A stretch of DNA of 64,000 nucleotides from Schmidtea nova (GCA_044892505.1 CM097883.1:424514001-424578000); one strand, 5' to 3'; shown: positions 36,889-64,000, counted from the first letter of the stretch. Numbers and translations are program-made. Notes: generated from the letters alone by a model not told the origin.

Positions 36889-37450
36889 TGCTGGGATTAT
36901 GGGTGGGTTTTAAGTAATTCAAATAAATAGTTAATCATTAATTGAACGACTATTGATGAGTACGTATACTAGGGATTCCACGCCCATAACCATACATAAC
37001 ATGACTACTACACGCGTATGCCCTTGACTATTCCCTACTAGCCAAGTTGGTACTGCATACGGTGGTGGAAAAATGATGGGCAGGTGAGCTTTGTTGCCAA
37101 AACTACTCCCCATTTATCTTCCCTCGGGTCCTTGCTGCCGATAGAAGGTCTTACGCATTTACATTCTATGGATGTTCGCTTCCTACTGAATTTTATACTA
37201 CACATCCTTATGATCTATCACACGCTTTTCCCCAATTTCACTATCCTTAACTGATCTACAAGGTAATTAATCAGCTCCTACGTAGAAACGGTCGGTTTGA
37301 GAAAAATGCGGCTGCGATTTTTTACTTCTAGGATTTAGCTATTGTTATTTTATTTTATTTAGTGAATTCACACGATGAGAGAAAAATTTTACACAGTAAT
37401 ACTTTTATTAAAATAATAAAGACAGGTTGTTATTTTACATTGAGGTTTTC

Positions 37451-38035
37451 CTATTCAAACTCCAGGCTAATCTCCTGGATTAACTCTGCTTCGGTTAAGG
37501 AGTTCAGGTGGTGGATTTGTTCGTCCAGGCGCTTTGCAAATTCTCGGCGACGACGGCGCTGTCGCGATCCCATTCGATGTTTTCGAAGCTGTTGGTTTAT
37601 GACCGGTGCTGACGCTATTATTCTCGGGGGATCACTGAGAAAAATAGGCAAATCTTCCGTTGTAAGAGTGGGTGCCATGATGATATCATCTTCTGTCCCG
37701 CAAGCGACATCTTGGTGAGTGCATTGTATCCAGCGCTGAGCCGTGATCGGCCGGATTAGCGCTCGCAATTCGGAGTCGATGTAACTTCTTGTTACTGCGT
37801 TCAGGCAATTTCGGAGTTCCCGCTGGACGGCATCTAGTTCCAATTTGGTTGCGGCCAGTGCTTCCTGCATCCGCTCAAGTTTTTTCGACTGGTCCTTCAT
37901 TTGTCCGGGCGAGAACCACTTCGCCCTTAATTCATCATTGGCGACCGTGAGTCGCTTGATCTGTCGCTGCTGGTCCCTCAACTTCCTTTCTTGGATTTGT
38001 CCCATGATTTTCTTGGAATTTTCTGTAGTCGGCAT
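37451..38035 (-). CDS. LTR-encoded 194-aa protein, N-terminal coiled coil, unknown function
   Basis: Open 194 codons, identical translation in both LTRs, AG acceptor 5 nt before ATG, AATAAA cluster ~100 nt downstream. Confidence 0.65.
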   Translation of the reverse strand: MPTTENSKKIMGQIQERKLRDQQRQIKRLTVANDELRAKWFSPGQMKDQSKKLERMQEALAATKLELDAVQRELRNCLNAVTRSYIDSELRALIRPITAQRWIQCTHQDVACGTEDDIIMAPTLTTEDLPIFLSDPPRIIASAPVINQQLRKHRMGSRQRRRRREFAKRLDEQIHHLNSLTEAELIQEISLEFE

Positions 38036-38353
38036 GTTGTCTGAATATTATAACGATAAATTCGCTGGAGGACCTATCAACAATGTTATTTTATTTAGTC
38101 TACTCTTTATTATTATTAAACGAGATGTATACTAATGTTTTTAATTATCGAGTTCTTTACAAAAATATTTAACTATCTAACCATTGAAGACTCAAAAGAT
38201 TTATTGAACTAATTTTGTATTAATAAATGAATTTCCTAATGACTATAACAACTACAATACTAAATCTACATGACAACACTATTAACAAAATGAGACACTT
38301 CAGACTTCTTTAAAACATTTATTAAATTCAAAAATAGGTGGCCATTTATTCAA

Positions 38354-38830
38354 TTATCCATCTCCGGTCGTTTTTCCCCGATACGAAAATATCGATTTAA
38401 TTTGCAAATTTGTGTGGATTCCCGTGCTATTGGACGAGGCTTGCTGGAAGCGGATTCTCTCAGCTTCTCGAAGGGGTCGTATGGCTGTATTGAACTTGAA
38501 CCCCAATTCCTTGAAGGTAGAGGCTGGAATGAACCCCCAATAAATGACACATTTCGGGAATCCTCCTTTGTCCAACATCAGGATGAACCAGGCGGCGTGC
38601 CATGATTCGAATTCCTCGTCTGGAATGATTGGCCAACTAGCGCATCCCCGGTACCATACGTGGTGCCGTGGATGGTCCCATACTGTAAATGGACAGGCGG
38701 TTTCGAGCTCTCGGCGCCATGCCCACATCTTTTGATGGATTTGCTGTAAAATCTCGAAAGGAGCCGGCTTTAATGGGCTAACTCGGGCTCGTTCTTGTCG
38801 TTTTTTGATAGTGTATCTATGCTTAGTCAT
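38354..38830 (-). CDS. LTR-encoded 158-aa Trp/Cys/His-rich protein, unknown function
   Basis: Open 158 codons in a GC-richer island flanked by AT-rich spacers, AATAAA after stop, identical in both LTRs. Confidence 0.6.
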   Translation of the reverse strand: MTKHRYTIKKRQERARVSPLKPAPFEILQQIHQKMWAWRRELETACPFTVWDHPRHHVWYRGCASWPIIPDEEFESWHAAWFILMLDKGGFPKCVIYWGFIPASTFKELGFKFNTAIRPLREAERIRFQQASSNSTGIHTNLQIKSIFSYRGKTTGDG

Positions 38831-40376
38831 GATTCCAAAACGATGCTGAATTTTATAATAGTTACAATTTACATCAATAATTAATCATAGTAAATGTTAT
38901 CTCTCATCGTGATATCTTTATTATTTGCCTACCCCTTAGCTGAAATCAAGAGAAACTGTCGTTCGTTACGGTATACATTACTCTCGTATCTACTTAGCTT
39001 TATCTGTTTACGATCAATATTATAGACGGAAAAAAATGGTGATTTGTCTGCTTGGATTTTCAAAATATTGATACCTCAAAACGGAAGCTCTCTCCCGTCA
39101 TGTATCCCTAGCTTATTCGAAAAAACGCTCTTTTGTATTAAATGCGGTCGACCTAATTTTTCTAAGGTTTATTAGACGTTTATCTAGCCATTGTGCTCTG
39201 GTGAGGGTGAACAATTTGTGCCTCCTCACGGTTAAAAAAAATTCTTTCATATCTTTAAGCGTTATCAAAAAATTTTCGTCCCCTCTGTAGCTAAAATGAT
39301 CGGAAAATAATTCCCCGGATTTGTTGGGTGTCCCATGTGCAAGTCTCAACCACTACTAATAAAATTATGCTTTACTATTTATTACTTTACCGTGTGTGGA
39401 GCCCTCGAGCACCACGCCACGGACGGACACCTTGGGAACCTAAAGCTCCCAACGGCGCAAGATTAATATGATAGTTTAAATAGTTTAAATATAACATAAA
39501 TCAAAATGAGATAACTAATAAATTATAATATGATAATGACATACGAATACAACGATATCATAAACGTAAATATACCAAAAATACCTCAATTGAATTCTGA
39601 AAATTTATTGATCAAAATCGGTCTAAACGGTGATCGTCGTCGGGGCAATGTGCAATCTAATGCGAATTTTTAGTTAAAGTCTAAATTTCAGTCTAACAAA
39701 GTCTACTAAAGTCTCACTCTAGTCAAACGTCTAGTCTATCAAAGTCTGATTTTATGAAAAATCTGATCAGTATTTATACTGATCAGTCGTGTCTAGACTG
39801 ACCAATCAGGTTTGGCCAGTTTCATGGTGGTTTTTAATTATTGTTTTTGATTCTAATTAATTTTTATTTTTTAGATTGTATTCTTCCTTGGAGGTCCGGG
39901 TTTCAAAAACAATTATTCAATAACAAGTACTTTTATTTGGTTTTAATTATTATTATTTGTATTTTATTTGTTTTTAGATGTCTCCTGGGCCCGTTAATAT
40001 CTATAAATTCATTTATTTTTATTTATAGCTTGTACTTAGTTATTCTATATTTTTACTATATTATTCCTTTCTTTTAATAAATAAATATTCCCCTTTTTAC
40101 CTTATTTTTCTCTTTTTTGTTTTAATTAATCTACTTTTATTTCACTGTTCCCTCTATTTGGCTGGCCCAACATCACTCGGGGACCCCTAAAATTGCGTCC
40201 CGCAATTAATTATACATTTACACCTATATCATCATACATAAAAATTAAGCAGATAAATGTCAATTTACATATACACAAAGAATCACGTAAGGTGATAGAT
40301 TTTATACGTAAGCACAAAGTCATATTATTGTTAAATGTAAGTGGATCATACATAAAGTGAATGTAATATATCAGTT

Positions 40377-40949
40377 TTACACAAGCTCTTTGATTTCATG
40401 ATTGGTATTGGATTGGATTGGGGTTCTTTCGCTGATTGTTCGTAGTTCGTAGTGGCTTTGGATTCGGTTTAGGTGTTTTCTCATTCGCTTTTGGGTTCTG
40501 ATGTCTTGTATTGTTGTTCGATTCAGGATGACATGTTTTTGTTTTAAGATCTTCACTCGGTATGATGTTATGAGGATTGTGATCGCGATAATGGTCACGC
40601 TGAGTGCAAGGATTATTATAATTGCGATGATCCATTTTTCTTGATATTCTATCTCTGCTTGGGCTAAGCTTTTTATGGGTTCTCGACCTTCTTTTAGGGT
40701 TTTTCTGATTGTTTTCAATTTGATTCGATGTTCATATAGGACCTGTTGAAATTTTTCATCGTTTGGGTTGTCTGATGTTATCTGTTGAAGTTGGGTGATT
40801 TCTTGTGTTGCTTCGCTGATTAGTTTATCTAGTTCTTGATAGGTTTTCTCGGGTAGGGCTCGTAGCTCCTTCTCTGTGAGTTGAAGATCTTCTCTTTGTA
40901 GGGTGATTGTTATTAGGTATAGGAATATCGGTATTCTGAGCTTTTTCAT
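40377..40949 (-). CDS. 190-aa cargo membrane protein (signal-like N-terminus, coiled coil, TM)
   Basis: MKKLRIPIFLYLITITL; WIIAIIIILALSVTIIAITILIT hydrophobic span. Confidence 0.7.
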   Translation of the reverse strand: MKKLRIPIFLYLITITLQREDLQLTEKELRALPEKTYQELDKLISEATQEITQLQQITSDNPNDEKFQQVLYEHRIKLKTIRKTLKEGREPIKSLAQAEIEYQEKWIIAIIIILALSVTIIAITILITSYRVKILKQKHVILNRTTIQDIRTQKRMRKHLNRIQSHYELRTISERTPIQSNTNHEIKELV

Positions 40950-41031: not shown

Positions 41032-42093
41032 TTACACAATCGTCTCGTTTGGTTCGTAGAAACCTTCGTCCTGAGGCTCTACTTGGTTCGTGGGGAGTGG
41101 TATCCAAACAACCCTGCTCCTCCACATTTCGACTTCATCTCGATACATGTGAGATATCTGGATCTCCTCGTCTAGCAAATATTCTAGGTAATTTGCTTGT
41201 TCTGTTAATGTTTCTATTTGTTTCTCTAATTCGATTACTTTTGTCTTTTGTTCGTCTTCTTTTATCATTTTTGTTACGGCTGCCGTTATACTTGCTTCTT
41301 TGGGTATTACTGATACTGTTACTCGTTTCTGTTTCAATTCTTCGTTTTCTTTCATCAAATTCGTTAAATTTTCCTCGTAACTTTGTTTCTCTTCCTTTAA
41401 CCTTTCCCTGGTTCTTTTTAGCTCTATTTTCTTTTGAGTAATCACCCCTTGATAACCATTTATATCTCTCTTCATCTCTTCTTCTTTCTGATTCCATATT
41501 CCGGTGAGCATAGTTTTCAGTTGTTCTTGATTAGCTAGTTCTTCTCCCATTCTTTGAACTTGATAGGTTAGTCCTTTAATTTTCTTTGCTTGTTCCCGGA
41601 TAAATTGCTGTCTCTTTGTATTCCATCTTTTATTCAACACTTCTTGGTGTATTTTCTGTTCTAACTCGTCTTTTAATTCGTCGATCTCTTTATATAATTT
41701 CCAGTCATCGCTATAAGCTGTCCTTTCTATTATTTCTCTAGCTTTTTCGTAAGATTCTTTCGCTTCTTTCTTCCAATATCTTGCTTGTTCTGTAATCGAA
41801 TACATCTTGTGTTCAGCTTCCATCTGCTGTCTGTCTCTTTCCTCTCGTCGCTCTTTCATCATTCTCTGGTAATATTCCTTTTGTTGTTGTAGCATTTTGT
41901 ATACTTCTTCTATTTTTTCTCGACTTCTTTGACTTGATCTTTCCGCTTCTTTTAATAATTCGGCTTGTCTCTCTATCTCCTCTTGCTTTCCATAATATGC
42001 ATTGACCCATATTTCAATCTGTTCTAGATGATCGCTAATCGCTTCTGCTTGATGCATCGTAATTTCCTGTAAGCATACTTCGATATTTCCCAT
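41032..42093 (-). CDS. 353-aa cargo coiled-coil protein
   Basis: Long open frame, E/K/Q-rich heptads; strong polypyrimidine-AG acceptor immediately upstream of ATG. Confidence 0.75.
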   Translation of the reverse strand: MGNIEVCLQEITMHQAEAISDHLEQIEIWVNAYYGKQEEIERQAELLKEAERSSQRSREKIEEVYKMLQQQKEYYQRMMKERREERDRQQMEAEHKMYSITEQARYWKKEAKESYEKAREIIERTAYSDDWKLYKEIDELKDELEQKIHQEVLNKRWNTKRQQFIREQAKKIKGLTYQVQRMGEELANQEQLKTMLTGIWNQKEEEMKRDINGYQGVITQKKIELKRTRERLKEEKQSYEENLTNLMKENEELKQKRVTVSVIPKEASITAAVTKMIKEDEQKTKVIELEKQIETLTEQANYLEYLLDEEIQISHMYRDEVEMWRSRVVWIPLPTNQVEPQDEGFYEPNETIV

Positions 42094-42211: not shown

Positions 42212-43594
42212 TTACGTCAACCATCCTTTTCTATCCGCTTTCTCATTCCTTTCCATTTCTATGTATAGGGTGTCTGCATATAATCGTTCCCATAAGCTTT
42301 CTTTCGTTATAAACATCGGTTCTCCCGCTGCTAATCCACATTCTGTGGTTGGTTTCTCGCTCGTACTCGCATGTTTCTCTGTCTCAAAGAATTTTTCCAC
42401 TGGTTTTGTTACACTTCTGATTCTTATAATGACTCCTACTTTCAAGGGCCATTCTACTAGGTCGTCGTATTCTCCTTTACATAGCGAGAAAAATATTGAC
42501 ACATGTGTTCCTCGTCCTCTTCCGTCTCCATTTGGGTATAGCTTCAATCTCACTTTAGCTCCGTTTCTCCATAAATAAAATGGTGGGCTTATTACTGCTG
42601 TTTTCGTCATATTTCTGGCCTCTGTTAATTTGTTTCTAAAATCTGTCACTTTCCACACATATGGTGCGATTGGTAACTTTTCCTCGGTATCTTGGGTGAG
42701 TTTGTTGTACTGGATTTTCATTCCTTTAGCCAGTTCTTCGATAGCTTTTATCTTTTCCTCCATCTTTTCTCGTGTTAGTTCGAATTGTTCTCTGGTTTCC
42801 AACAGTAGGTTTACCATTATCTTGTGTGACTCTATTTCTCTTTCTAATTTTTTGATTGTTTGTTCGGTTTCTTTTGTTGCTTCGTTTGTCATTTCCGCAT
42901 GCTTTAGCAATGCTTCCTCCAGATGTTGTTTCATGGTTTTTTGCGTTCTTTTCTCCATACATCCCTGTTTGTTATAAGGACATTCCCTTGGTTTCTCCGT
43001 GCACACTTTCCAATGTTCTTGTAATTTTACTTCTACCGTTATCTCGCATTCGTTTGAACATATTCCTATATATTGTCTACATACTTTCTCCTCTTTTACA
43101 TTCAGGTGTTCTTCTTCGATCTTTCTCCTCGTTTCTCGAGTTCCACAATATTCGCATAGACTTTCCTCTTCTTTACATTCATCTTTGTGCTGCTCTTTAT
43201 TCTTTATAGTTATTTTTTGTTGGCATTTGTTACATTCAGTTCTCTTCTCTTCGCAGTTCTCCAGATGGTTCTCGAGATCGCGTATTTGTCCTTGCCATAT
43301 ACATGGTTGATTTATACATTCGGTTTTCGTGTTCATGATTTCTCTCTGAGTTGCTCTATCTGGTCCGGTTTCTTCGAATTTTATTTGTCCTTCTTTGCAT
43401 TCTGGACATTCTGGTGGTCTTTTCATACTTAACTCGTGTATGCATTTGGTACATACTCTGCATCCGCATAGGGTTTGTCTTGGTTTCAATATTATGTTTT
43501 TACAATTTACACAAGTGAGTCTCTGACTCCATTTCCTGTTCTCGGCTCTCAAAATTTCGATTATCCGCTCTTCGGCTTTTCCTTCTGTATTCAT
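42212..43594 (-). CDS. TRAF: Intronless TRAF-family protein (RING - TRAF zinc fingers - coiled coil - MATH)
   Basis: CVNC..PRQTLCGCRVCTKC...CPEC; CINQPCIWQG...HLENC; YVWKVTDF...ISPPFY...LKLYPNGDGRGRGTHVSIFF...GEYDDLVEWP. Confidence 0.92.
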   Translation of the reverse strand: MNTEGKAEERIIEILRAENRKWSQRLTCVNCKNIILKPRQTLCGCRVCTKCIHELSMKRPPECPECKEGQIKFEETGPDRATQREIMNTKTECINQPCIWQGQIRDLENHLENCEEKRTECNKCQQKITIKNKEQHKDECKEEESLCEYCGTRETRRKIEEEHLNVKEEKVCRQYIGICSNECEITVEVKLQEHWKVCTEKPRECPYNKQGCMEKRTQKTMKQHLEEALLKHAEMTNEATKETEQTIKKLEREIESHKIMVNLLLETREQFELTREKMEEKIKAIEELAKGMKIQYNKLTQDTEEKLPIAPYVWKVTDFRNKLTEARNMTKTAVISPPFYLWRNGAKVRLKLYPNGDGRGRGTHVSIFFSLCKGEYDDLVEWPLKVGVIIRIRSVTKPVEKFFETEKHASTSEKPTTECGLAAGEPMFITKESLWERLYADTLYIEMERNEKADRKGWLT

Positions 43595-43685: not shown

Positions 43686-44042
43686 CTACGGCTCGTTTGT
43701 TGAATCTGGTTCTGGGTCATTTTCTGATCTGTTTATTGCCCAATTTGTCCATCCATCCTCTGCTTCTTCTGTCTCTCCCATTGTTAAACGGTCTATCTCT
43801 ATTGCTTGTCTCTGATTTATGTCGCTCATCACTTGATTCTCTCTGGTAAGTTGCGTTATCAATCTCTGTTGCTCCTCGATTCTGTGGAGTTGTTCAAAAC
43901 TATTATTATAACTTTCGGATAACAAATTCTGTTTCTCAATTAACTGATTTTGTAGTGAGTTGATTGTTCGTATTAACATGTCACACTGGGCTTTCCATCG
44001 CATAGCCATAGTAGTTTCTGCTATTTCTTCCTGTTCGTTCAT
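43686..44042 (-). CDS. 118-aa cargo coiled-coil protein
   Basis: Open frame between polyprotein stop and TRAF; Q/E-rich heptads. Confidence 0.6.
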   Translation of the reverse strand: MNEQEEIAETTMAMRWKAQCDMLIRTINSLQNQLIEKQNLLSESYNNSFEQLHRIEEQQRLITQLTRENQVMSDINQRQAIEIDRLTMGETEEAEDGWTNWAINRSENDPEPDSTNEP

Positions 44043-59100: not shown

Positions 59101-59125
59101 TTATCTCTTCTCTGGGTTCGCTCAT
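44168..59125 (-). CDS. 4985-aa Gag-Env-Pol-cargo polyprotein in one uninterrupted ORF
   Basis: Single frame in ORF track; domains listed separately. Confidence 0.95.
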   Translation of the reverse strand: MSEPREEIKDKFSGEPFNGDASKLETFLKEFGIFVEVCKWKPETTVSRIQLYLKDSALDLYLEAKNGINPPTSWSAIKDFFQQTFGINKVLNEAFTEFSMRKQKINESNAVYASELKKLAKLIFNQDSPINEELMAAIFVGGLRRPDIRAQVGCQGCKTIDQALETANRFELHMIGNDGRIYLAMDTAQNEQEVNLNNHIPNSQQLNRPPPQRRNEGNKVSNYGNQNNYNPQGPTKQCKTCGKLGHWQQECYQNLNCGKCGVKGHSESRCYTITCFNCGRPGHLSRNCGQRSNQRGNWQNTGNRQNYGNQPTGGNRQNYGNQPNNGNQPEYGNQPNSNNNNQNKNTTKEIHLMQEVQRLTELINNTTRGNPQTGQQQINMMRKIESENERLNRESQARHAQEWARVQREEEQKQQERERQPLRINMMRATNQANTHEKETVPEINPTNLNPTNNENRKEIVPGSEETEIEKEVETEANQEEKRMIWKKGMMVILPNGHMFRFQYNIKEEVGTLFNKVNEMAPGVTKLPREAFLKIEDAPEVKLKLTDTWENMGVVETKRNVMVIKEIEPEGIPSPVRHETRISRIFKGKMIRRRLGEIDELERKLRKVEVVDDKSESTQKAIKSETRPTENTPSEINQIKHINMLRGQAKNFSDDEEDSDVSSLAGDMLNEPEIEDKKIEVVKTPETIQVKEDEIQKLLDNALEVIYNEEFIDKKHYRKFMRAILQMNYKEWLPGREVETLSQYVGKLLKEPLHEYIILIEIKTCLPRIWIKTPLTEDIYQWVEDRLGSSYKNKFLYSQNGLVKKRTHLIETGIWPGEVTTLSICDDKREENLQEVAKEANMCFERKIKPRLEYEKGRILRGNLNSMIEQIIPQIKKHRKELMRSEYEKLKRCIECIRDTSHTRWSQISYGKVIAKMGKAMFRQGKITDLKIAVELPNEDTKEIEVVADCTIKELVNVINETLLQREPEEEWEDDIIMKYNEHVLWDHDERRLYKIGIWDNHQTIHVIRMDDTPRETAKDEKRERERQKEVVHKLQQIVDIYRNWRIWPEWEDVLEELNLNRRLLTPVEKKWNERGKCWEPKAGEYEEEYEIGIEDDHKPETGRVCMVTRKAMPADLDGPETATMWLEREKQKTEEFVEILKTNAHGKRKVVKGLADFFVVNGEDITCLRKVAKAIAEYKRVNEWCPEQLDHVIKKWRNQEFSQESPQKVHLRIVYPNQEKEEFWVGIAEKVRDIKKKLRYEPPFHLQHQGRSLDNSLEIGITPAQLDIANTLTVAAIAGQPLKLKEEKKPKGSMSTPSPMKSVMTPGTSSEQAKTTPRETRERTPPEPYDVDEIFTDSDDMLEELIELTKEKDDNIFERIQELPTAIPVTNTEDEVEQEIIIEEVNEIAEEEARRANVENVQFTQEMERWLEERANEPRDVTEETGRETRLVETGTTMDKRPRGRPKMDPANVVIKSREEKRRDQWDLCLKKLNKIAETKEKETTQTYQGEEWISKMLMEILAIIDPELKKWWRINEISERAKSLHSAIAPILPELIKEKTRSNHLDWQGTTMLIKKLTEGAETDNKYLIAMAYTIYNLLTLSRGRLKPTALERHIKNTAKIIEKEIEPYIISKGGWETFTKTNQKKNQAKNLKKKFEEILGELEKEKSGTGNGKSSLNLSSIIMMMLIWMISTDGATAFEVFDCDQMALGEKYSLRGTEQCKDATPTELKTLKKRQLYHVYQEAELIRTMVRECKVYKTRFAFYCGHRHYSAIVMPGTERESVMLQGEDCEKLFKHGEVETRDRVKIRGKTGVILQQTYYVAGAITGGEGYCQGATYPIFGVAATNLVVIDTYTVELKTYEAFFDPTTGEMKTLPMCKIESNTCQTGMSTLTYQIRGKECQLQLLKEAEFDEIQGKTFQEEEEDEAARGKILQDTVRGEKKIETRTQEKQIKMRNTPTVLITSDADIGMRFVKGKTALKCGVAMLETNYPGIFVSKQEVPSAKRKVHTNDVKLHLYMNNKMDFLFHRGQASLQKVYYDLINNDCILNREILKTKLAVAITNPDSAMPLLPLREGHFGRVVGEVMYVYICKKTNTKVATMTKLQPGQCTNELEIEYKGKVRYVQPVTRIINPVSFEPNPFNCSNAYGPLYQNPDGNWVMFPSRTEVPAPREFELMQLSKGRKFKDVDVSNMGFYSAKDLEAARQNILFPARREAVLSSIVTITGGTNYQGGPNYELLLSPAHFKKATENMMKAMWGRFLIFGQMMAGILGVILIIQIIRVIITQMLACFDIYKREKKVNWKLVVGFLPFLAKTMVLHGHSKDIHGIKRLLKILAKMKGTDEEVGRKFKKIMNNEQARQRLKKERKGLWERMKGYRTQDDSSDDDDDDNEGGQVFKNQVPQYVEKNPAEMWKCYAPPPTMYQEPTPGMRQNTMQMMPMTNIYPMIPEDYRTRRCRSVDPQGDSHTIAVMSSNTGPVLTTTIEINGREIEAMIDTGANISAIDIKWIPQEQRRDIERTNVHVIACSKEVVEVAGRWWVKIKHQNTEIETYVAVIPALSVPCIIGTDLMPALFKEIVIDLGTMRLKDRTGQICAIEAKVTSSKQIIVPARREKICFVKIDPTIEGDMIFEPSKRFEKRKSLPMARGLVSANDNGEIPINVVNFDEEDKIIYENERLGKLTPMMDIEIPIKEGVKEEEPTWNIDSQLLNEDQKKQLERLLIEYKDIFAASDLDLGTCDVTLHTIPLTDETPIALRPYKLAEAQKSVAEAEVQKMLDAEVIEPSCSPWQFPVVMVKKKDGTQRFCIDYRRLNAVTKRDTYPLPDINEMLLTLQGAAYFTSLDLKSGYWQIKMKEEDKEKTAFTIGRDLYQFRKMPFGLTNAPASFQRCMNFVTHGIKQCMVYIDDLLIYSSTFEQHIQDIRDVFVRLRQWKLKLKPSKCDWAKEKVTFLGHIVSAKGKEPDPRNIDKVKECPVPKTITQIQEFLGLCGYYRKFIKDYAGIAKPIQELVKKDVSFIWGSEQQTAFETLRDKLITAPILVHPDFKKPFLLATDASGYAAGAVLGQYDDEGKERVIGYYSRTFKKHEKNYSVTEREALAIILAIKHFKYLLWGHVICITTDHQPLVWLGQHKETSSRLMRWAMQLQEYSPDIKFKSGKANANADCMSRLTFPELTDPEVQRICIVIAEDLDFSELKKDQQEDKELRPIIEFLSSRNMDVFKDNAELKEHMRKYQHRYTIEKGWLLIQNGEKRLMCLPGNRRKEIITQYHDGKLGGHMSDKKTLDRMRQKYYWPTMDEDVKEWIKNCLTCATRKDSGKKWKNPLKPMPIPAEPMTTIAMDVIGPLPESLNGNQYILVITDYLTKFPEAFAMPDQKAKTVARILVEEICCRYGTPKQILTDQGTNFMSEILDEVTNYFRIAKLRTSPYHPQTNGQTERFNGTLIRMLSNYVSKHQTDWDEYVKLCLMAYRMSIHAATKLSPFQLMYGRECNMPIDLEYQPPLSQYMEEDDYVTKFKERMQEIWKTAELNIKFYQESYKDLHDQKKNVKTNDLKPGDWVMIETPEIIPGTVKKLQRPGKGPYEVIYKKENNVKVKLVNRPLIRPIYVNTCRCKKVPKTITTAPEERIITRSQTARMNMLRATNESTEAENNQQEKRNKEMVLKAREIMGKWHVRDDILRDIQSIISDYARGLPTKPVISELLEKIPEILSLQDIGGQPALHNAIKWGEVERVKEFLKIAKETNQHLGFGNSEQETPLMIAAIYKSDKAIIDLLINADFNWTERDRENKTVLNHAIWSSNQIMLKQIIEKATWEIDELIKGDIIKEAIKIGNCKTIRKLIKWKRSENDTWVLNINEVYSEGQNTLLQFLLKFVCDQKALLTLLDRRNIIISKNKEECKFESEKEALFRKIREWCAKSLTKTITYKDISNFQDKYKTVEEEYDKLIDILNHPEKCKQFLCQKERESKRKVTPLFSAEVPYQERLDAIQDKAKELLPEFENSKHTLEILGSIVEKVHAYAEGTYNENDMMIIKREMPVTFLLTKNGVLPIHRALRAGKNRRVVEIARLMQDCGSDMNMKDKKGDTLMIFAARANTKTRVLQELYEAGAGLMGRTNKDSSILDVALLAHNWEVINFIKTITNQEEIEYLTRTVKKASVHSMMHNAELTEAILNWMNPNTNEPAFRINECMEQGQNLYIKCALIINKWPKIIDIFMRRKDLRFTNNPKETERTDKWKELMKTYLNNWIKAKKEILDCKLTDKEIPKQAETQEYEASILTTITYEKMIEAINVEDDIFNDQKGGDNTGNDDDSTRENPEDHELSDKEDSEEKGRDTEKNDKNNEFGKQRNNNYKNKNEIKRTGYKQTINPFFKPELLLLTVIMTLISPTQGMICEERATIQIGNAKGIERVCWSKKDKISGQNSPMDCKISEYEQEIIEIDDLELDTWYRMCTVRKPKDPRSHKTIACASYLTPKVTITIQQPSKGDYVVGKCRGTETQGTKNKKPQTIDRRTTPTIQITIDRPEARVTTNETERVTYQTELLCLALILTMLKRLEEGIDIDTMAVTEMNDTQNTNPKCWARSNEEIGVSEIKTSRKRKTNKVTKISEVKADRTYELCLLEKERHKKGTTICKTFQPGETIKFIRRGRRNKRTKRRTTIMLELTGIEPDVKGVCWKKQEKKTNQNTPPQCRTNRGTTTIKIEGLESNQTYEICLIRKSDKITVNELECKLYKTPTRTRVGKTTRKSRRQRNKGKARYTTTFKPNGQQKNQEIQIRTEKNTTATLILWRIDNKTLEICWVIVQKQRERQPRDCGNVKGKEEISIRNLKFNSEYEICAVEKTDILGNQQERCETYYTPVNSTSKGKVRKLEFKELSQTTKQMDAEQVVIDPYARWTPEEVIKEVKRKQQEREQLLNKLKGQYGPMINQSEITKMDVNKQVRELIGLGILAATIPVITVLLIIWIYDVFNKKPITHWPDIKIMNYSIELPEEVQKEFQRRTKGKEFWRQIEDEERYEGKTVMVI
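44346..46115 (-). other. C-terminal type I membrane module: internal signal peptide, four Cys-containing FN3-like repeats, TM
   Basis: PELLLLTVIMTLISPTQG signal; repeats CW...I.(G/D/N)L...(T/S).YE(I/L)C...C..Y.T at ~45810-46060, 45320-45510, 45030-45265, 44665-44895; TM LIGLGILAATIPVITVLLIIWIY 44346-44413. Confidence 0.6.
46815..48085 (-). other. Ankyrin-repeat region (two clusters)
   Basis: GQPALHNAIKWG, QETPLMIAA, NKTVLNHAI (47790-48085); GVLPIHRAL, GDTLMIFAAR, DSSILDVAL (46815-47097). Confidence 0.8.
48380..49420 (-). other. Integrase (HHCC, D,D(35)E, GPY/F)
   Basis: HDGKLGGH...CLTC; MDVIGPL (D 49190), TDQGTNF (D 49010), GQTERFN (E 48902); GKGPYEV. Confidence 0.95.
49700..50070 (-). other. 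RNase H
   Basis: LATDASGYAAGAVLGQ; NYSVTEREALAI; TDHQPLVWL. Confidence 0.95.
50330..50970 (-). other. Reverse transcriptase (Ty3/gypsy type)
   Basis: FCIDYRRLN, YPLPDINEML, LDLKSGYWQI, MPFGLTNAPASFQR, VYIDD (50483-50494). Confidence 0.97.
51430..51760 (-). other. Aspartic protease
   Basis: EAMIDTGANISAI (DTG 51701-51709), CIIGTDL. Confidence 0.95.
52230..54147 (-). other. Envelope glycoprotein, chuvirus-G / herpes gB-like (class III) type, with signal peptide and TM
   Basis: Signal LSSIIMMMLIWMISTDGATA; FDC..SL..C; ECKV..R..FYCG; CG..L.ETNYP.IFV; Y.NNK; LYD/YYD...C.L; GE..Y..C; C.NEL...PVTRI; GFYS..DL...I.FP; WGRFLIFGQMMAG TM. Confidence 0.85.
54263..54650 (-). other. Bcl-2-like helical domain
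   Basis: BH2-like IEPYIISKGGWETF at 54263-54301, preceded by ~120 aa of predicted amphipathic helices; BH1 NWGR not conserved. Confidence 0.6.
55290..57665 (-). other. Up to four ubiquitin-like (beta-grasp) domains
   Basis: Best: LKIAVELPNEDTKEIEVVADCTIKELV...IMKYNEHVL...RLYKIGIWDNHQTIHVI (56095-56340); weaker at 57430-57665, 56655-56855, 55290-55500. Confidence 0.5.
58262..59125 (-). other. Gag: capsid domain plus three CCHC zinc knuckles
   Basis: PFNGD...W..IKDFF...RKQKINES..YA.EL..LA...FVGGL; CKTCGKLGHWQQEC, CGKCGVKGHSESRC, CFNCGRPGHLSRNC (58262-58414). Confidence 0.92.
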
Positions 59126-60105
59126 TTCAATTCCGCTGTCTGTAGTTATTTTACTTTCGTTTCCTCTTGTTTCTAGTTCACTGTTAGGTTCGTCACTCGA
59201 ATTTCGGTCGATCTCAGTTTCTTTTGCTGATTCGTTATCTGATGCTTTACTATCGTTATCGGTATCGTCACTTTCTGTTTCTTGTTCTACTTCGTCTTCT
59301 ATTTCTTCTATATAATCGTTGTTGGTTTTGTCGACTTCTATTTCACTTATTGGGTTTCTCTCGGGTTCTGCTTAATTTTCTTTGTTGCTTGAACTGTTGC
59401 TTGTTACTGATAGTTTATCGTTTTCGATAATCGACTTTTGTATTATTATCTGCCTTGCTTTACTTCCTTTTAGGCCTTTCTGATTATTATTCTTGGTAGC
59501 TTTATTCTTTTCTGCTGGTTTTATTATGACACTCTTTTCTCCTTTTCTCAACGGGATTACTTTTGTATACTCAATTTTCCTGTCTTATCGTGTTCCGATT
59601 CTTTTCTTCCTTGGTTGCTTGGTTTGGTTTGATTGATTTATCTAAAATACAAATGTCACTTCAACGATACTCTATTGTTATCGTTGCGCTTTTATTCCCT
59701 TTTTACGGGACTTCTCATTACTGGGTTTCTATTATTTTTCCCCATTCCCAGATTCCCCTTTATTTAAGTCTATTTAAATTATCTATATACTAGTCACAAT
59801 TATCTATTTAGTCATAACAATTATCTATCGGTTACTAAAATACATCAATTATTTTTCCCGCGGTCTCCCAATTTATTTGTCGTTCGAACGCTCTAATTCC
59901 CTGAGTCATTTGACTCGATTATTATTTTATCATCTCTTTATCTTTCTCTCTGCTAGCCTCTAATTATTAATTCTGCCGGTCTTTCCGGTCAGCTCCTATT
60001 TCTCAATTCTACTTGCATGCATTATTTTAGGTCGCATAATCAGCTTTACTCGCATTTCTCAATTCCTGGTGCGCACTATTCTCATTATCGTCGACGATCA
60101 CAACT

Positions 60106-60741
60106 CTGGGCCTATATTCCCTCTGTTGTTATTTCTTATCACTTGCAACCCTGGGCCTATATTCCCTCCGTTGCTACTCAAACGATTGTAACCCTGGGCT
60201 TATATTCCCTCCGTTACTATCTTCCTTTAATTTTAAATAATTGCAACCCTGGGCCTATATTCCCTCCGTTGCTACTCAACAATTGTAACCCTGGGCCTAT
60301 ATTCCCTCCGTTACTATATATCCGGATATCCCTATTGGCTCCTTTGGCCTCTAATTAATATCAATTATCTCAAATGGCTCTTATGGCCTCAAATTCATAT
60401 CTCAATTATCTCAAATGGCTCTATTGGCCTTAAATTCATATCTCAATTATCTCAAATGGCTCTATTGGCCTTAAATCGTATCTCTCAATAACGCCTAGCT
60501 AGGTCATTCAATATGGCTCTTTGGCCTCAACCCTTTGTTTCAAGGGACAAACCGCTGATAACCCTTTGTTTCAAGGGACAAATTCTAATAACCCTTTGTT
60601 TCAAGGGACAAACCGCTGATAACCCTTTGTTTCAAGGGACAAATTCTAATAAACCTTTGTTTCAAGGGACAAACCGCTGATAACCCTTTGTTTCAAGGGA
60701 CAAATTCTAATAACCCTTTGTTTCAAGGGACAAATTCTAAT
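60106..60741. repeat. Three adjacent tandem arrays in the 5' leader
   Basis: 5x CTGGGCCTATATTCCCTCCGTT core (60106-60312); ~41-bp TGGCTCTATTGGCC units (60336-60528); 7x 30/31-bp AACCCTTTGTTTCAAGGGACAAA units (60529-60741). Confidence 0.9.
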
Positions 60742-61218
60742 AAATTTTCCTTAACCGGTTAATCGTAATTCTTAACTTCGCTAGCGACTACAATTTCTCA
60801 GCTGAGTTCTCTCAATTTCATGCGAGCTGATTATGCACCTCTTATTTTTCTCTATAATTCCTCGATTCTTTGTTTTATTACTAATTCTTTCGCTGATCAG
60901 TCATAATTCAATTTTTATTATTTTCTCTGCGCGCATCTTACCTCATCAGGGTTTTCCCTATTTCTCTCCCCAACCAAAATATACAAAAAGATCGCGTTGG
61001 TCTACTAATGCGGGATGTGGTGATCAATCACATCACAAAAGCTTCCCAACATTTGCGATTGGCCCCTTTCTATATACCCCGAGTGGGTTGATCAACTGGT
61101 ACCTCCCAATGGGTGCTTAACGGACTACTTGACAGTAGCTCAAAAATTAATTAACATTGTTGATTGCTCCCCTGACTTTGTCATTCGATACAATATATTA
61201 ACACACTCTAAATATTTA

Positions 61219-61680
61219 TTATAAATAAACTACAATTCTATCAGCTACAGAGAAATTGCACATGGGGCACTTATCACACTTATTCGCACAGTTTTTACAA
61301 AATCGAAAATGTCCGCATGGTAGAAACATTATTTGGATTTCACTGTCTTCGCATATGTAACATCGTTTATATTGTTTTGTTGCCTCGACCCCTTGCGACA
61401 TCCATCGGTTATAAGTTAGGTTTAACTGCTGTTCTATATGTCGGCATCTGATATTCAACTCGGCATCCTCTAATCGTGCTTTGTACCATTTATATCGCGT
61501 ATTTATATCGAGTTTATTTACTTTCTCTATGATTTTTATTAACTCAGTTGTTTCCTCCGTTTGTGTCGTAGGTTCCTCATATTCGGATGCTCTTATTCGG
61601 GTTATTTTTTCGCAGACTGTCTCAAATGTATCGTTCTCGGTGTTGAAAAATTCCTCGATTTCTTTCAGTTTTTCCTCCAT
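61219..61680 (-). CDS. 153-aa protein with C-terminal IAP-type RING, no BIR domain
   Basis: CYICEDSEIQIMFLPCGHFRFCKNCANKCDKCPMCNFSVADRIVVYL-stop. Confidence 0.85.
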   Translation of the reverse strand: MEEKLKEIEEFFNTENDTFETVCEKITRIRASEYEEPTTQTEETTELIKIIEKVNKLDINTRYKWYKARLEDAELNIRCRHIEQQLNLTYNRWMSQGVEATKQYKRCYICEDSEIQIMFLPCGHFRFCKNCANKCDKCPMCNFSVADRIVVYL

Positions 61681-61933
61681 TTCCTAGATAATTTATTTAA
61701 TTACTGTGTTAATATTATTCGAAAAGTAGTACTGTGTTTCGTTTCTGACAGTTTTATAGCCTCCCCCCGTGTTTCGGTAAATTGTCGTCCCGACCTGTTA
61801 TTTATGAATGCATTTGTTCAATTTATCTACTAATTTGTTTTAATTTGTTTTAATACTATTTCTACTCACAAAATTCTGACTTTAAATTTCTCTGTTGTCA
61901 TTGGGTTCACCTTTTCCGCATAAAACAAAGTTG

Positions 61934-61951
61934 ATCCCGGCTGAGCCCCCA
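61934..61951 (-). promoter_or_regulatory. Primer-binding site, tRNA-Pro type
   Basis: TGGGGGCTCAGCCGGGAT, 16/18 to the vertebrate tRNA-Pro PBS TGGGGGCTCGTCCGGGAT; 6 nt inside the LTR end. Confidence 0.85.
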
Positions 61952-62519
61952 AATTTATGCTGGGATTATGGGTGGGTTTTAAGTAATTCAAATAAATAGT
62001 TAATCATTAATTGAACGACTATTGATGAGTACGTATACTAGGGATTCCACGCCCATAACCATACATAACATGACTACTACACGCGTATGCCCTTGACTAT
62101 TCCCTACTAGCCAAGTTGGTACTGCATACGGTGGTGGAAAAATGATGGGCAGGTGAGCTTTGTTGCCAAAACTACTCCCCATTTATCTTCCCTCGGGTCC
62201 TTGCTGCCGATAGAAGGTCTTACGCATTTACATTCTATGGATGTTCGCTTCCTACTGAATTTTATACTACACATCCTTATGATCTATCACACGCTTTTCC
62301 CCAATTTCACTATCCTTAACTGATCTACAAGGTAATTAATCAGCTCCTACGTAGAAACGGTCGGTTTGAGAAAAATGCGGCTGCGATTTTTTACTTCTAG
62401 GATTTAGCTATTGTTATTTTATTTTATTTAGTGAATTCACACGATGAGAGAAAAATTTTACACAGTAATACTTTTATTAAAATAATAAAGACAGGTTGTT
62501 ATTTTACATTGAGGTTTTC

Positions 62520-63104
62520 CTATTCAAACTCCAGGCTAATCTCCTGGATTAACTCTGCTTCGGTTAAGGAGTTCAGGTGGTGGATTTGTTCGTCCAGGCG
62601 CTTTGCAAATTCTCGGCGACGACGGCGCTGTCGCGATCCCATTCGATGTTTTCGAAGCTGTTGGTTTATGACCGGTGCTGACGCTATTATTCTCGGGGGA
62701 TCACTGAGAAAAATAGGCAAATCTTCCGTTGTAAGAGTGGGTGCCATGATGATATCATCTTCTGTCCCGCAAGCGACATCTTGGTGAGTGCATTGTATCC
62801 AGCGCTGAGCCGTGATCGGCCGGATTAGCGCTCGCAATTCGGAGTCGATGTAACTTCTTGTTACTGCGTTCAGGCAATTTCGGAGTTCCCGCTGGACGGC
62901 ATCTAGTTCCAATTTGGTTGCGGCCAGTGCTTCCTGCATCCGCTCAAGTTTTTTCGACTGGTCCTTCATTTGTCCGGGCGAGAACCACTTCGCCCTTAAT
63001 TCATCATTGGCGACCGTGAGTCGCTTGATCTGTCGCTGCTGGTCCCTCAACTTCCTTTCTTGGATTTGTCCCATGATTTTCTTGGAATTTTCTGTAGTCG
63101 GCAT
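62520..63104 (-). CDS. 5' LTR copy of 194-aa ORF
   Basis: Identical translation to 37451-38035. Confidence 0.55.
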   Translation of the reverse strand: MPTTENSKKIMGQIQERKLRDQQRQIKRLTVANDELRAKWFSPGQMKDQSKKLERMQEALAATKLELDAVQRELRNCLNAVTRSYIDSELRALIRPITAQRWIQCTHQDVACGTEDDIIMAPTLTTEDLPIFLSDPPRIIASAPVINQQLRKHRMGSRQRRRRREFAKRLDEQIHHLNSLTEAELIQEISLEFE

Positions 63105-63422
63105 GTTGTCTGAATATTATAACGATAAATTCGCTGGAGGACCTATCAACAATGTTATTTTATTTAGTCTACTCTTTATTATTATTAAACGAGATGTATA
63201 CTAATGTTTTTAATTATCGAGTTCTTTACAAAAATATTTAACTATCTAACCATTGAAGACTCAAAAGATTTATTGAACTAATTTTGTATTAATAAATGAA
63301 TTTCCTAATGACTATAACAACTACAATACTAAATCTACATGACAACACTATTAACAAAATGAGACACTTCAGACTTCTTTAAAACATTTATTAAATTCAA
63401 AAATAGGTGGCCATTTATTCAA

Positions 63423-63899
63423 TTATCCATCTCCGGTCGTTTTTCCCCGATACGAAAATATCGATTTAATTTGCAAATTTGTGTGGATTCCCGTGCTATT
63501 GGACGAGGCTTGCTGGAAGCGGATTCTCTCAGCTTCTCGAAGGGGTCGTATGGCTGTATTGAACTTGAACCCCAATTCCTTGAAGGTAGAGGCTGGAATG
63601 AACCCCCAATAAATGACACATTTCGGGAATCCTCCTTTGTCCAACATCAGGATGAACCAGGCGGCGTGCCATGATTCGAATTCCTCGTCTGGAATGATTG
63701 GCCAACTAGCGCATCCCCGGTACCATACGTGGTGCCGTGGATGGTCCCATACTGTAAATGGACAGGCGGTTTCGAGCTCTCGGCGCCATGCCCACATCTT
63801 TTGATGGATTTGCTGTAAAATCTCGAAAGGAGCCGGCTTTAATGGGCTAACTCGGGCTCGTTCTTGTCGTTTTTTGATAGTGTATCTATGCTTAGTCAT
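63423..63899 (-). CDS. 5' LTR copy of 158-aa ORF
   Basis: Identical translation to 38354-38830. Confidence 0.55.
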   Translation of the reverse strand: MTKHRYTIKKRQERARVSPLKPAPFEILQQIHQKMWAWRRELETACPFTVWDHPRHHVWYRGCASWPIIPDEEFESWHAAWFILMLDKGGFPKCVIYWGFIPASTFKELGFKFNTAIRPLREAERIRFQQASSNSTGIHTNLQIKSIFSYRGKTTGDG

Positions 63900-64000
63900 G
63901 ATTCCAAAACGATGCTGAATTTTATAATAGTTACAATTTACATCAATAATTAATCATAGTAAATGTTATCTCTCATCGTGATATCTTTATTATTTGCCTA

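What the first reader, a model, noticed from the sequence alone, without database searches (positions are those of the whole stretch)
36889..64000. Giant (~28 kb) intact gypsy retroelement with a 4985-aa polyprotein and multiple cargo genes
Seen: LTR pair, PBS, one 14.96-kb open frame and at least seven further same-strand ORFs. Known: Ty3/gypsy elements are usually about 5-15 kb with gag, pol and an optional 3' env. Inference: this is an unusually large, recently active, enveloped retrovirus-like element whose coding complexity approaches that of a DNA virus; I do not recognise this architecture as described.
Basis: partly seen in the sequence, partly recalled or inferred. Interest (0 to 1): 0.95.

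Follow-up and report, generated by a model that had tools for sequence, protein, structure and literature searches.

The report
Giant Burro-type gypsy endogenous retrovirus
This is a real, apparently intact, very recently inserted 27-29 kb gypsy-type retrovirus-like element with one 4985-residue polyprotein and several captured host-like genes, but this odd design is already described in planarian flatworms as the 'Burro' (GYPSM1) elements.

Summary
On the minus strand there is a 100% identical direct repeat (36889-38931 = 61958-64000, cut by the window end). There is a tRNA-type primer site just inside the right copy, one 14,958-nt ORF (44168-59125) and seven further same-strand ORFs.

The polyprotein reads: Gag with three CCHC knuckles, a 1,350-residue acidic spacer, and a complete Monjiviricetes-type fusion glycoprotein with its own signal-like segment and membrane anchor. 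Then come protease, RT, RNase H, integrase, ankyrin repeats and a C-terminal membrane protein with four Cys-containing repeats. Accessory ORFs encode an IAP-type RING protein, a full-length TRAF homologue, coiled-coil proteins and a small membrane protein.

Pol is closest to yeast Ty3. Two metagenomic relatives independently show the unusual env-protease and integrase-ankyrin junctions, so a chimeric assembly is unlikely.

Planarian Burro/GYPSM1 elements match it: over 30 kb, a 4,873-5,140-residue ORF1, env in frame between gag and pol, and TRAF-MATH, RING and ankyrin cargo.

Details differ from both published descriptions: TRAF sits in a downstream ORF, and no BIR, BCL2 or dUTPase was detected. 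I could identify neither the host nor the exact family. The C-terminal membrane module is the one possibly new feature.

The parts
61958..64000 (-). 5' LTR, inner 2043 bp only; the outer part lies beyond the window end
   Evidence: 100% identical to 36889-38931. On the element strand it ends in ...CA.
61933..61951 (-). Primer binding site, 19 nt starting with TGG, 6 nt after the LTR end
   Evidence: Read directly. Its complement ends in CCA and looks like the acceptor and T arm of a tRNA. No tRNA gene was on hand to name it.
61219..61680 (-). Upstream accessory ORF, 153 aa, with an IAP-type C-terminal RING and no BIR domain
   Evidence: PF13920 at 9e-12. The best solved-structure hits are the XIAP and cIAP RING domains at 2e-11. 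Codon usage resembles the polyprotein.
60100..60764 (-). Three tandem-repeat arrays in the 2.8-kb leader
   Evidence: Units of 30/61 bp at 60529-60743 and 41 bp at 60336-60484. A third array at about 60100-60330 was seen by eye. The predicted RNA fold is no better than shuffles, z = -0.12.
44168..59125 (-). Single polyprotein ORF, 4985 aa
   Evidence: No stop codon. No similar giant protein was found in the protein collection except one that matches pol only.
58226..59125 (-). Gag part (residues 1-300): retrotransposon gag-like region and three CCHC knuckles
   Evidence: PF03732 at 0.0014 and zf-CCHC at 7e-09. The three CCHC patterns lie at residues 238-292.
54152..58225 (-). Acidic, E/K-rich spacer (residues 301-1658) with no family above threshold and two weak ubiquitin-like stretches
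   Evidence: There is weak collinear similarity to the ORF upstream of env in relative L002. Sub-threshold ubiquitin-family hits occur in both, at 0.094 and 0.015.
52226..54151 (-). Envelope module (residues 1659-2300): signal-like segment, ectodomain with 14 Cys, membrane anchor at 2245-2263, short tail
   Evidence: PF24664 Monjiviricetes_fusion at 3e-68, covering profile positions 20-579 of 653. It is 36-40% identical to P0002/L002, with all 14 Cys and the A-x-A site invariant.
51479..51751 (-). Aspartic protease (residues 2459-2549)
   Evidence: PF00077 at 6e-08. The D-T-G-A motif is present.
49763..50815 (-). Reverse transcriptase and RNase H (residues 2771-3121)
   Evidence: RVT_1 at 5e-37 and RT_RNaseH at 3e-38. 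The Y-I-D-D motif is present. The solved Ty3 RT matches at 7e-90.
48866..49438 (-). Integrase (residues 3230-3420)
   Evidence: Integrase_H2C2 at 6e-22 and rve at 3e-10. The HHCC and D,D-35-E patterns are present.
46826..48058 (-). Ankyrin-repeat region (residues 3690-4100) in frame after integrase
   Evidence: Ank_2 at 8e-13, with a second weaker block. Relative L003 has the same integrase-ankyrin continuity.
44168..46120 (-). C-terminal membrane module (residues 4336-4985): signal-like segment, four Cys-containing repeats of about 100 aa, anchor at 4906-4927, 60-aa tail
   Evidence: No homologue among 1.84 billion representative proteins and none in the PDB. L003 has the same layout of hydrophobic segments near the end of its ORF.
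43686..44042 (-). ORF of 118 aa, coiled-coil-like
   Evidence: No family found.
42212..43594 (-). Full-length TRAF homologue, 460 aa (RING, TRAF zinc fingers, coiled coil, MATH)
   Evidence: MATH_2 at 2e-21 and zf-TRAF. The MATH domains of TRAF2/3/5 match at 1e-22 and the RING-zinc-finger part of TRAF6 at 4e-11.
41032..42093 (-). ORF of 353 aa, coiled-coil-like, no family
40377..40949 (-). ORF of 190 aa, small membrane protein (N-terminal signal-like segment, anchor at 107-123)
40064..40118 (-). Purine-rich tracts on the element strand, candidate polypurine tract
   Evidence: The true LTR start cannot be fixed in this window.
36889..38931 (-). 3' LTR, the part proven by identity; the inner end lies somewhere up to 40376
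   Evidence: It holds ORFs of 158 aa (38354-38830) and 194 aa (37451-38035), which recur at 63423-63899 and 62520-63104.

Best explanation
This is a full-length, recently integrated member of the giant Burro-type group of Ty3/gypsy endogenous retroviruses, so far described in planarian flatworms. Shown: LTRs, a primer site, and one 4985-aa frame that holds Gag, a complete class III type fusion glycoprotein of the Monjiviricetes family, protease, RT-RNase H, integrase, ankyrin repeats and a terminal membrane protein. Accessory genes for an IAP-type RING protein, a TRAF homologue and small coiled-coil and membrane proteins are also shown. Inferred: the element is transcribed from the 5' LTR into a genomic RNA of about 25 kb that is reverse-transcribed from a tRNA primer. 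Inferred: the polyprotein is cut by its own protease on the cytosolic side. Inferred: host signal peptidase cuts it after the two internal signal-like segments, so the two ectodomains end up in the ER lumen while Gag and Pol stay cytosolic. Inferred: the RING, TRAF and ankyrin cargo acts on host ubiquitin, cell-death or innate signalling pathways.
For: The LTR pair is identical over 2043 bp and a TGG-type PBS follows it. Domain order and scores are, and the catalytic motifs are intact. The best solved relative of pol is Ty3 Gag-Pol at 1.8e-118. Env has a signal-like segment, an A-x-A site, 14 Cys and an anchor, and all of these are conserved in a 36-40% identical relative. The env-protease junction recurs in L002 and the integrase-ankyrin junction and terminal hydrophobic layout recur in L003. 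Codon usage of the internal accessory ORFs matches the polyprotein. The published Burro/GYPSM1 description matches feature by feature in size, ORF1 length, three CCHC, in-frame env with mononegavirus hits, MATH-TRAF, RING, ankyrin, accessory ORFs and tandem repeats (PMC6431247). BURRO1 is transcribed and piRNA-controlled in S. mediterranea (PMC8532177).
Against: No Burro sequence was available, so membership rests on architecture and not on alignment. The host is not identified, and the flank holds only transposon fragments. BIR, BCL2-like and dUTPase-like motifs reported for Burro were not detected by Pfam or by a zinc-pattern search. TRAF-MATH sits in a separate downstream ORF here, whereas it is inside ORF1 in Burro1 and in an upstream ORF in the second published species. 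No exact copy of any of its proteins is on record. The 5' LTR is incomplete and the target-site duplication is unseen. Processing, membrane topology and cargo function are inference only. Both structure predictions failed, with pLDDT 34 and 36.
Confidence: 0.85

Rival explanations
1. It is a giant gag-env-pol gypsy element of a separate lineage or host that resembles Burro by convergence or distant common descent, and is not a member of the planarian Burro families.
For: No direct sequence comparison with Burro was possible. BIR, BCL2 and dUTPase motifs are missing. The TRAF position differs from both published elements. Relatives with the same junctions occur in environmental metagenomes of unknown host. 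The gag-env-pol order arose in several clades (PMC13524379).
Against: The number of shared unusual features is high: ORF1 of about 4.9-5.1 thousand residues, three CCHC as in S. mediterranea, in-frame env of mononegavirus type, TRAF, RING, ankyrin and leader tandem repeats. The flank is strongly A+T-rich, as in planarian genomes (PMC11410931).
Confidence: 0.1
2. The locus is a chimera: a normal gypsy element with nested insertions, an adjacent endogenous RNA-virus glycoprotein gene, or a misassembly that created a false single frame.
For: The env family is otherwise typical of negative-strand RNA viruses. The right LTR is cut by the window, so the element's integrity cannot be fully checked. 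Identical LTRs could also arise from assembly collapse.
Against: One stop-free frame of 14,958 nt cannot arise from random joins. G+C and strand skew are uniform through 40-61 kb. There is no second RT, integrase or transposase, no internal LTR-like repeat and no copy in the flank. The env-protease and integrase-ankyrin junctions are each seen again in independent relatives that are 40-45% identical. No other RNA-virus gene is present.
Confidence: 0.03
3. The element is an old, domesticated or dead locus whose small ORFs are chance frames.
For: The LTR ORFs fit the polyprotein's codon table poorly. Five small ORFs have no family.
Against: There are 0 differences between the LTR copies. All enzyme motifs are intact. 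Internal ORFs share codon usage with the polyprotein, and the LTR ORFs exceed nearly all shuffles in length.
Confidence: 0.02

Closest known systems
[quoted passage not shown] 2018; Arkhipova & Yushenova 2019, PMC6431247)
   Same: Giant gypsy element with long LTRs. One ORF1 of almost 5,000 residues. Gag with three CCHC. Env in frame between gag and protease with mononegavirus-type hits. Ankyrin, RING and MATH-TRAF motifs. Accessory ORFs. Tandem repeats. A+T-rich host genome.
   Different: ORF1 is 4985 aa here against 4873 aa. TRAF-MATH is a separate ORF downstream of the polyprotein. BIR, BCL2-like, Smc and dUTPase-like motifs were not detected here with Pfam; the published ones came partly from HHpred, which is more sensitive. 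Sequence identity was not testable.
Burro-like element of Dugesia (Girardia) tigrina (PMC6431247)
   Same: TRAF-MATH is encoded by an accessory ORF and not inside ORF1. The giant ORF1 has gag, env and pol.
   Different: There ORF1 is 5140 aa with two CCHC, the accessory ORF is upstream and a midasin-like region is present. Here there are three CCHC, the TRAF ORF is downstream and no midasin-like hit was found.
Gag-env-pol 'errantiviruses' with gB-type (class III) envelopes in Platyhelminthes, Nematoda and Bryozoa (PMC13524379; Sacco et al. 2022)
   Same: Env lies between gag and pol. The envelope is of the class III kind and has conserved disulfide patterns.
   Different: Those were sought as elements of at most about 10 kb with separate ORFs. 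Here env is in frame within a 15-kb ORF and the element carries much extra cargo.
Chuvirus-like glycoprotein captured by BEL/Pao and gypsy elements of arthropods (Dezordi et al. 2020, cited in PMC13524379)
   Same: A glycoprotein family of negative-strand RNA viruses sits inside an LTR retroelement.
   Different: There it is a separate 3' ORF in insects and crustaceans. The backbone differs (BEL/Pao) or the elements are much smaller.
Ogre (plants) and giant foamy-like fish endogenous retroviruses
   Same: Oversized LTR elements with extra ORFs.
   Different: In Ogre much of the size comes from the LTRs. The fish elements reach 17 kb with a conventional gene order. Neither has an in-frame env or a 5,000-residue polyprotein.

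Membership tests
Ty3/gypsy (Metaviridae) LTR retroelement | Two long terminal repeats in direct orientation | tested here: met
   2043 bp are identical at an offset of 25069. The right copy is cut by the window.
Ty3/gypsy (Metaviridae) LTR retroelement | tRNA primer binding site next to the 5' LTR and polypurine tract before the 3' LTR | tested here: inconclusive
   A 19-nt TGG-type site lies 6 nt after the LTR, but there was no tRNA to pair it with. Purine tracts lie at 40064-40118, but the LTR start is not fixed.
Ty3/gypsy (Metaviridae) LTR retroelement | Pol order protease-RT-RNase H-integrase, with RT and integrase closest to Ty3/gypsy | tested here: met
   The order is shown. The best solved relatives are Ty3 Gag-Pol at 1.8e-118 and Ty3 RT at 7e-90, ahead of caulimovirus, foamy virus and other retroviral RTs.
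Ty3/gypsy (Metaviridae) LTR retroelement | Gag with capsid-like region and CCHC nucleocapsid knuckles | tested here: met
   Retrotrans_gag is weak at 0.0014. Three CCHC knuckles are present.
Ty3/gypsy (Metaviridae) LTR retroelement | Target-site duplication flanking the element | not testable with these tools
   The outer end of the 5' LTR lies beyond base 64000.
Burro / GYPSM1 group of planarian giant gypsy elements | Total length above about 25-30 kb with an internal region above 20 kb | tested here: met
   27.1-28.6 kb in total and 21.6-23.0 kb internal.
Burro / GYPSM1 group of planarian giant gypsy elements | Single ORF1 of about 4,900-5,100 residues that fuses gag, env and pol | tested here: met
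   4985 aa. Env (PF24664) lies between the CCHC knuckles and protease in one frame.
Burro / GYPSM1 group of planarian giant gypsy elements | Cargo motifs: MATH-TRAF, RING, ankyrin | tested here: met
   TRAF and RING are in separate ORFs.
Burro / GYPSM1 group of planarian giant gypsy elements | Cargo motifs: BIR, BCL2-like, Ubl/SUMO-like, dUTPase-like | tested here: not met
   No Pfam hit even at lenient thresholds and no BIR zinc pattern. Only sub-threshold ubiquitin-like hits were seen. These motifs vary between the published members, and HHpred was not available.
Burro / GYPSM1 group of planarian giant gypsy elements | Sequence similarity to catalogued Burro consensus entries | not testable with these tools
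   No Repbase/Dfam or planarian genome is among the collections. Exact-protein look-ups returned nothing.
Burro / GYPSM1 group of planarian giant gypsy elements | Host is a dugesiid planarian | tested here: inconclusive
   The flank is about 25% G+C, which is compatible with planarian genomes of more than 70% A+T. It holds only piggyBac and hAT fragments and no host gene that names the species.
Class III viral fusion glycoproteins (rhabdovirus G / gB / chuvirus type) | Sequence membership in a fusion-glycoprotein family, with signal peptide, Cys-rich ectodomain and C-terminal anchor | tested here: met
   PF24664 at 3e-68 over profile positions 20-579 of 653. A signal-like segment, 14 conserved Cys and an anchor are present.
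Class III viral fusion glycoproteins (rhabdovirus G / gB / chuvirus type) | Class III fold (fusion loops on a beta-sheet domain, central helix) | tested here: inconclusive
   The AlphaFold model from a two-sequence alignment had pLDDT 34. There was no PDB sequence hit. The class assignment rests on the literature for this family.

The most novel reading that the evidence does not exclude
The last 650 residues of the polyprotein form a second virion or cell-surface protein that has not been described for Burro elements. This stretch has a signal-like segment, four Cys-containing repeats of about 100 residues, a membrane anchor and a 60-residue tail. On this reading the single polyprotein crosses the ER membrane in two separate stretches, as flavivirus polyproteins do. 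That would deliver a class III fusogen and a separate attachment-type protein to the lumen while Gag and Pol stay cytosolic. The same layout of hydrophobic segments in relative L003, despite no detectable sequence similarity, would mean the module is an old, fast-evolving part of this lineage.
Probability: 0.25. Interest if true: 0.6.

Novelty: new member of a known kind. Interest (0 to 1): 0.35.

Why it matters
Burro-type elements are the largest known LTR retroelements. They show that a reverse-transcribing element can carry about 25 kb of RNA with virus-like coding complexity: its own fusogen plus homologues of host TRAF and IAP-RING signalling proteins.

This copy is a clean example. It has no stops, identical LTRs and all motifs intact. 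Its gene layout differs from the two published ones, which documents that cargo moves between the polyprotein and separate ORFs.

The one point that may add to the literature is the terminal repeat-containing membrane module and the implied two-ectodomain topology. For the scan as a whole the lesson is that the finding is real but not new.

Tried and rejected
- **Whole-polyprotein homologue search:** it gave one hit, which matches pol only.
- **Env searches:** the env domain alone and a two-sequence profile gave one relative, P0002. The word-based search probably misses most viral members.
- **C-terminal module:** the full HMMER search against 1.84 billion representatives gave nothing.
- **PDB sequence searches:** env, the spacer and the C-terminal module gave nothing. 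A profile of the internal repeats gave only a non-significant tenascin FN3 hit at E = 1.5, so the FN3-like idea is not established.
- **Structure prediction:** both AlphaFold jobs were unusable, with pLDDT 34 and 36. No fold search was run.
- **Exact-protein look-ups:** five of the element's proteins are not on record.
- **Collection scans:** scans of viral contigs and the first metagenome scan with env found no relatives.
- **RNA and copies:** Rfam and tRNA scans of the window were empty. No other copy or fragment of the element lies in the left flank.
- **Leader repeats:** their RNA fold is no better than shuffles.
- **Inner LTR end:** a search for an inverted terminal repeat found nothing, so the end is given as an interval.
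- **Grohme et al. 2018:** the paper is not held in the library.
- **Rejected readings:** the nested-insertion or misassembly reading and the adjacent RNA-virus-insert reading, for the reasons given under rivals.

Full report
**Observation**

The element lies on the minus strand. A direct repeat starts at 36889 and at 61958 (offset 25069). It is identical at every one of the 2043 positions that can be compared before the window ends at 64000. The right copy is therefore the 5' LTR, seen only in its inner part.

The inner end of the 3' LTR cannot be fixed. It lies between 38932 and the end of the last internal ORF at 40377. That gives an LTR of 2043-3488 bp and an element of 27.1-28.6 kb. Purine-rich tracts that could serve as the polypurine tract lie at 40064-40118.

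On the element strand the LTR ends in CA. Six bases further there is a 19-nt site that starts with TGG, at 61933-61951. Its complement ends in CCA and has the look of a tRNA acceptor and T arm. I could not name the tRNA, because neither the window nor the fetched loci hold a tRNA gene.

The long ORF runs from 59125 down to 44168, which is 4985 codons. Seven further ORFs lie on the same strand. Five are internal (153, 118, 460, 353 and 190 aa) and two are inside the LTR (158 and 194 aa, each present in both copies).

The element is 34-41% G+C with a constant strand skew, whereas the flank is about 25% G+C. The internal small ORFs fit the polyprotein's codon table best in their own frame, by 0.25-0.65 nats per codon. 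The LTR ORFs fit less well, but they are longer than the longest ORF in 499 and 500 of 500 dinucleotide shuffles.

**Anatomy of the polyprotein**

Pfam and motif searches give this order:

- **Gag.** A gag-like region (weak) and three CCHC knuckles at residues 238-292.
- **Spacer.** About 1,350 residues, rich in E and K, with no family above threshold.
- **Envelope module, residues 1659-2300.**
- **Protease**, with D-T-G-A.
- **Reverse transcriptase**, with Y-I-D-D.
- **RNase H.**
- **Integrase**, with HHCC and D,D-35-E.
- **Two blocks of ankyrin repeats.**
- **A final 650-residue membrane module.**

The envelope module matches PF24664 (Monjiviricetes fusion glycoprotein) at 3e-68 over profile positions 20-579 of 653. 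It begins with a hydrophobic signal-like segment followed by an A-x-A site. It has 14 cysteines in the ectodomain, a strong membrane anchor at 2245-2263 and a short tail.

The pol part is closest to yeast Ty3 among solved structures (Gag-Pol 1.8e-118, RT 7e-90). Caulimovirus, foamy virus and other retroviral enzymes score lower. This places the element in Ty3/gypsy.

**Accessory genes**

- The ORF upstream of gag (61219-61680) ends in a RING of the IAP type. XIAP and cIAP RING domains are the best solved matches, at 2e-11. It has no BIR domain.
- The 460-aa ORF after the polyprotein is a complete TRAF homologue with RING, TRAF zinc fingers, coiled coil and MATH domain.
- The 353-aa and 118-aa ORFs look like coiled coils.
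- The 190-aa ORF is a small membrane protein.
- The 194-aa LTR ORF has an arginine-rich stretch.
- None of these last four ORFs, nor the 158-aa LTR ORF, has a family.
- The 2.8-kb leader between the primer site and gag holds the RING ORF and three arrays of tandem repeats.

**The C-terminal module**

Residues 4336-4985 have a signal-like segment and 18 cysteines. The cysteines fall into four repeats of about 100 residues, each with a conserved C-W...C...Y-x-x-C...C pattern; three repeats are clear and one is degenerate. A membrane anchor follows at 4906-4927, then a 60-residue tail.

The module has no homologue among 1.84 billion representative proteins and none in the PDB. A profile of the repeats gave only a non-significant tenascin FN3 hit, and the structure model was unusable.

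The published accounts of Burro that I could read do not mention such a module.

**Relatives**

- **L002 (8.2 kb, metagenome).** Found through P0002. It has an env that is 40% identical and a protease-RT that is 45% identical, side by side in the same order as here. All 14 env cysteines and the A-x-A site are invariant between the two. The ORF upstream of its env shows weak, collinear similarity to the spacer here, with sub-threshold ubiquitin-family hits in both. In L002 the env-pol stretch is split over two called genes, and the stretch I first tried to translate held two in-frame stops. I give no places.
- **L003 (11.5 kb, metagenome).** It has protease-RT-RNase H-integrase at 44% identity over 1198 residues in one 2356-aa ORF. 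That ORF continues into ankyrin repeats and ends with the same layout as here: a hydrophobic segment, about 400 residues, a membrane anchor and a short tail. It carries its own cargo, a second aspartic protease domain and an RNase T-type exonuclease ORF.

Both unusual junctions of the window's polyprotein therefore recur in independent, divergent relatives. Uniform composition, the absence of a second set of enzymes and the absence of internal LTR-like repeats point the same way. Together these speak against a chimera.

**Comparison with what is known**

The review by Arkhipova and Yushenova (PMC6431247) describes the Burro elements of Schmidtea mediterranea (Grohme et al. 2018) and their earlier Repbase entry GYPSM1 (Jurka 2007). 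The published features are:

- an internal region of up to 25 kb and more than 30 kb in total;
- thousands of copies;
- a 4,873-aa ORF1 with a typical Gag and three CCHC knuckles;
- env in frame between gag and pol, with hits to fusion glycoproteins of arthropod and fish mononegaviruses;
- RING, Smc, MATH-TRAF, BIR, BCL2-like, ubiquitin-like, dUTPase-like and ankyrin motifs;
- accessory ORFs that may alternatively be subdomains of the polyprotein;
- tandem repeats.

A second species has a 5,140-aa ORF1 with two CCHC knuckles and the MATH-TRAF domain in an upstream accessory ORF. BURRO1 is called highly abundant and active, is expressed in tissue, and BURRO4 is piRNA-targeted (PMC8532177). The gag-env-pol order with class III type envelopes in Platyhelminthes, Nematoda and Bryozoa is also reported (PMC13524379).

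The element in the window matches this description in nearly every respect. It differs in four ways. ORF1 is 4985 aa. TRAF is a full-length separate ORF downstream of the polyprotein. The IAP-type RING is a separate upstream ORF. BIR, BCL2-like and dUTPase-like motifs were not found by the tools I had.

I could not align it with any Burro sequence and could not identify the host. The flank holds only piggyBac and hAT fragments, and none of the element's proteins is on record in the collection. If the contig is from S. mediterranea, the element may simply be one of Burro-2 to -4.

**How it most likely works**

Shown:

- the parts needed by an LTR retroelement are present and unbroken;
- a complete type I fusion glycoprotein is built into the polyprotein;
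- a second type I membrane module ends the polyprotein;
- cargo genes are homologous to TRAF and to the IAP RING.

Inferred from general knowledge of retroelements and of polyprotein viruses:

- transcription starts in the 5' LTR and reverse transcription starts from a tRNA primer;
- the element's own protease cuts the polyprotein on the cytosolic side;
- host signal peptidase cuts after the two internal signal-like segments, so the ectodomains face the ER lumen and Gag and Pol stay in the cytosol;
- the RING, TRAF and ankyrin proteins interfere with host ubiquitin, cell-death or innate signalling.

An alternative for env is translation from a spliced RNA. I saw no way to test this here.

**Verdict**

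I file the element as a new or possibly already catalogued member of the Burro-type group, with confidence 0.85. Interest is moderate to low for a specialist. The terminal membrane module and the two-ectodomain layout are the only features that may go beyond the literature.

- No repaired, consensus or joined sequence was made.
- The alignment tools printed consensus lines by themselves and I used none of them.
- Short generic motif patterns (D-S/T-G, Y-x-D-D, CCHC, HHCC, D,D-35-E and a BIR zinc pattern) were written from general knowledge as search expressions.
- While correcting the translation error, I worked out in my reasoning roughly where one stop of relative L002 lies relative to the end of a called gene. 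No place is given in the notes or in this report.
- Nothing in the window looked human.

Noticed in passing
window 13766-14116 (-) and 17942-18313 (+): Fragments of a piggyBac-type transposase (DDE_Tnp_1_7, 7e-11) and of a hAT transposase dimerisation domain (8e-11) lie in the A+T-rich flank. The stretch 16-22 kb is richer in G+C (0.30-0.32), with GC skew up to +0.26.
   Followed up: partly
window 23475-23984 (-): A 169-aa ORF has an IAP-type RING (PF13920, 1e-06) that is 39% identical over 46 residues to the RING of the element's upstream ORF. A run of N lies inside this ORF and was left as it is. It may be a host IAP-like exon or a remnant of another element.
   Followed up: partly
window 108-455 (+) and 2728-3120 (+): There are weak, sub-threshold hits to a parvovirus-type phospholipase A2 domain (0.0037) and to the poxvirus A32 packaging ATPase family (0.0014). 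They may be remnants of a Maverick/Polinton-like or other DNA element, or noise.
   Followed up: no
window 21984-22325 (-): Weak hit to a viral RNA-dependent RNA polymerase family (RdRP_4, 0.0085), below the curated cut-off.
   Followed up: no
window 35627-36250 (+) and 36360-36824 (+): Two ORFs of 207 and 154 aa lie directly outside the 3' LTR on the opposite strand. They have no family hit. Their relation to the insertion site is unknown.
   Followed up: no
window 37451-38035 and 38354-38830 (-), repeated at 62520-63104 and 63423-63899: Two ORFs lie inside the LTR. They are longer than in nearly all shuffles but have codon usage unlike the polyprotein. The 194-aa one is coiled-coil-like and has a run of arginines.
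   Followed up: partly
window 60100-60764 (-): Three different tandem-repeat arrays lie in the leader between the RING ORF and gag. The 30-nt unit holds a 5-bp hairpin, but the array does not fold better than shuffles.
   Followed up: partly
L001 4318-16398: A metagenome contig of 60% G+C encodes a 4026-aa gypsy-type polyprotein with a 3'-5' exonuclease domain (PF01612) between RNase H and integrase, and a chromodomain. This is another oversized pol, unrelated in its extras to the window's element.
   Followed up: no
L003 39-7109 and 9043-10374: The closest pol relative has a second aspartic protease domain (DDI-like) after integrase and an accessory ORF with an RNase T-type exonuclease domain. 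Cargo in this lineage therefore varies from element to element.
   Followed up: partly
window 7535-7752, 11866-12024, 21250-21421, 23214-23406, 23502-23665, 30104-30244, 30547-30679: Seven runs of N (133-218 bases each), all in the flank and none in the element. They were left untouched.
   Followed up: no
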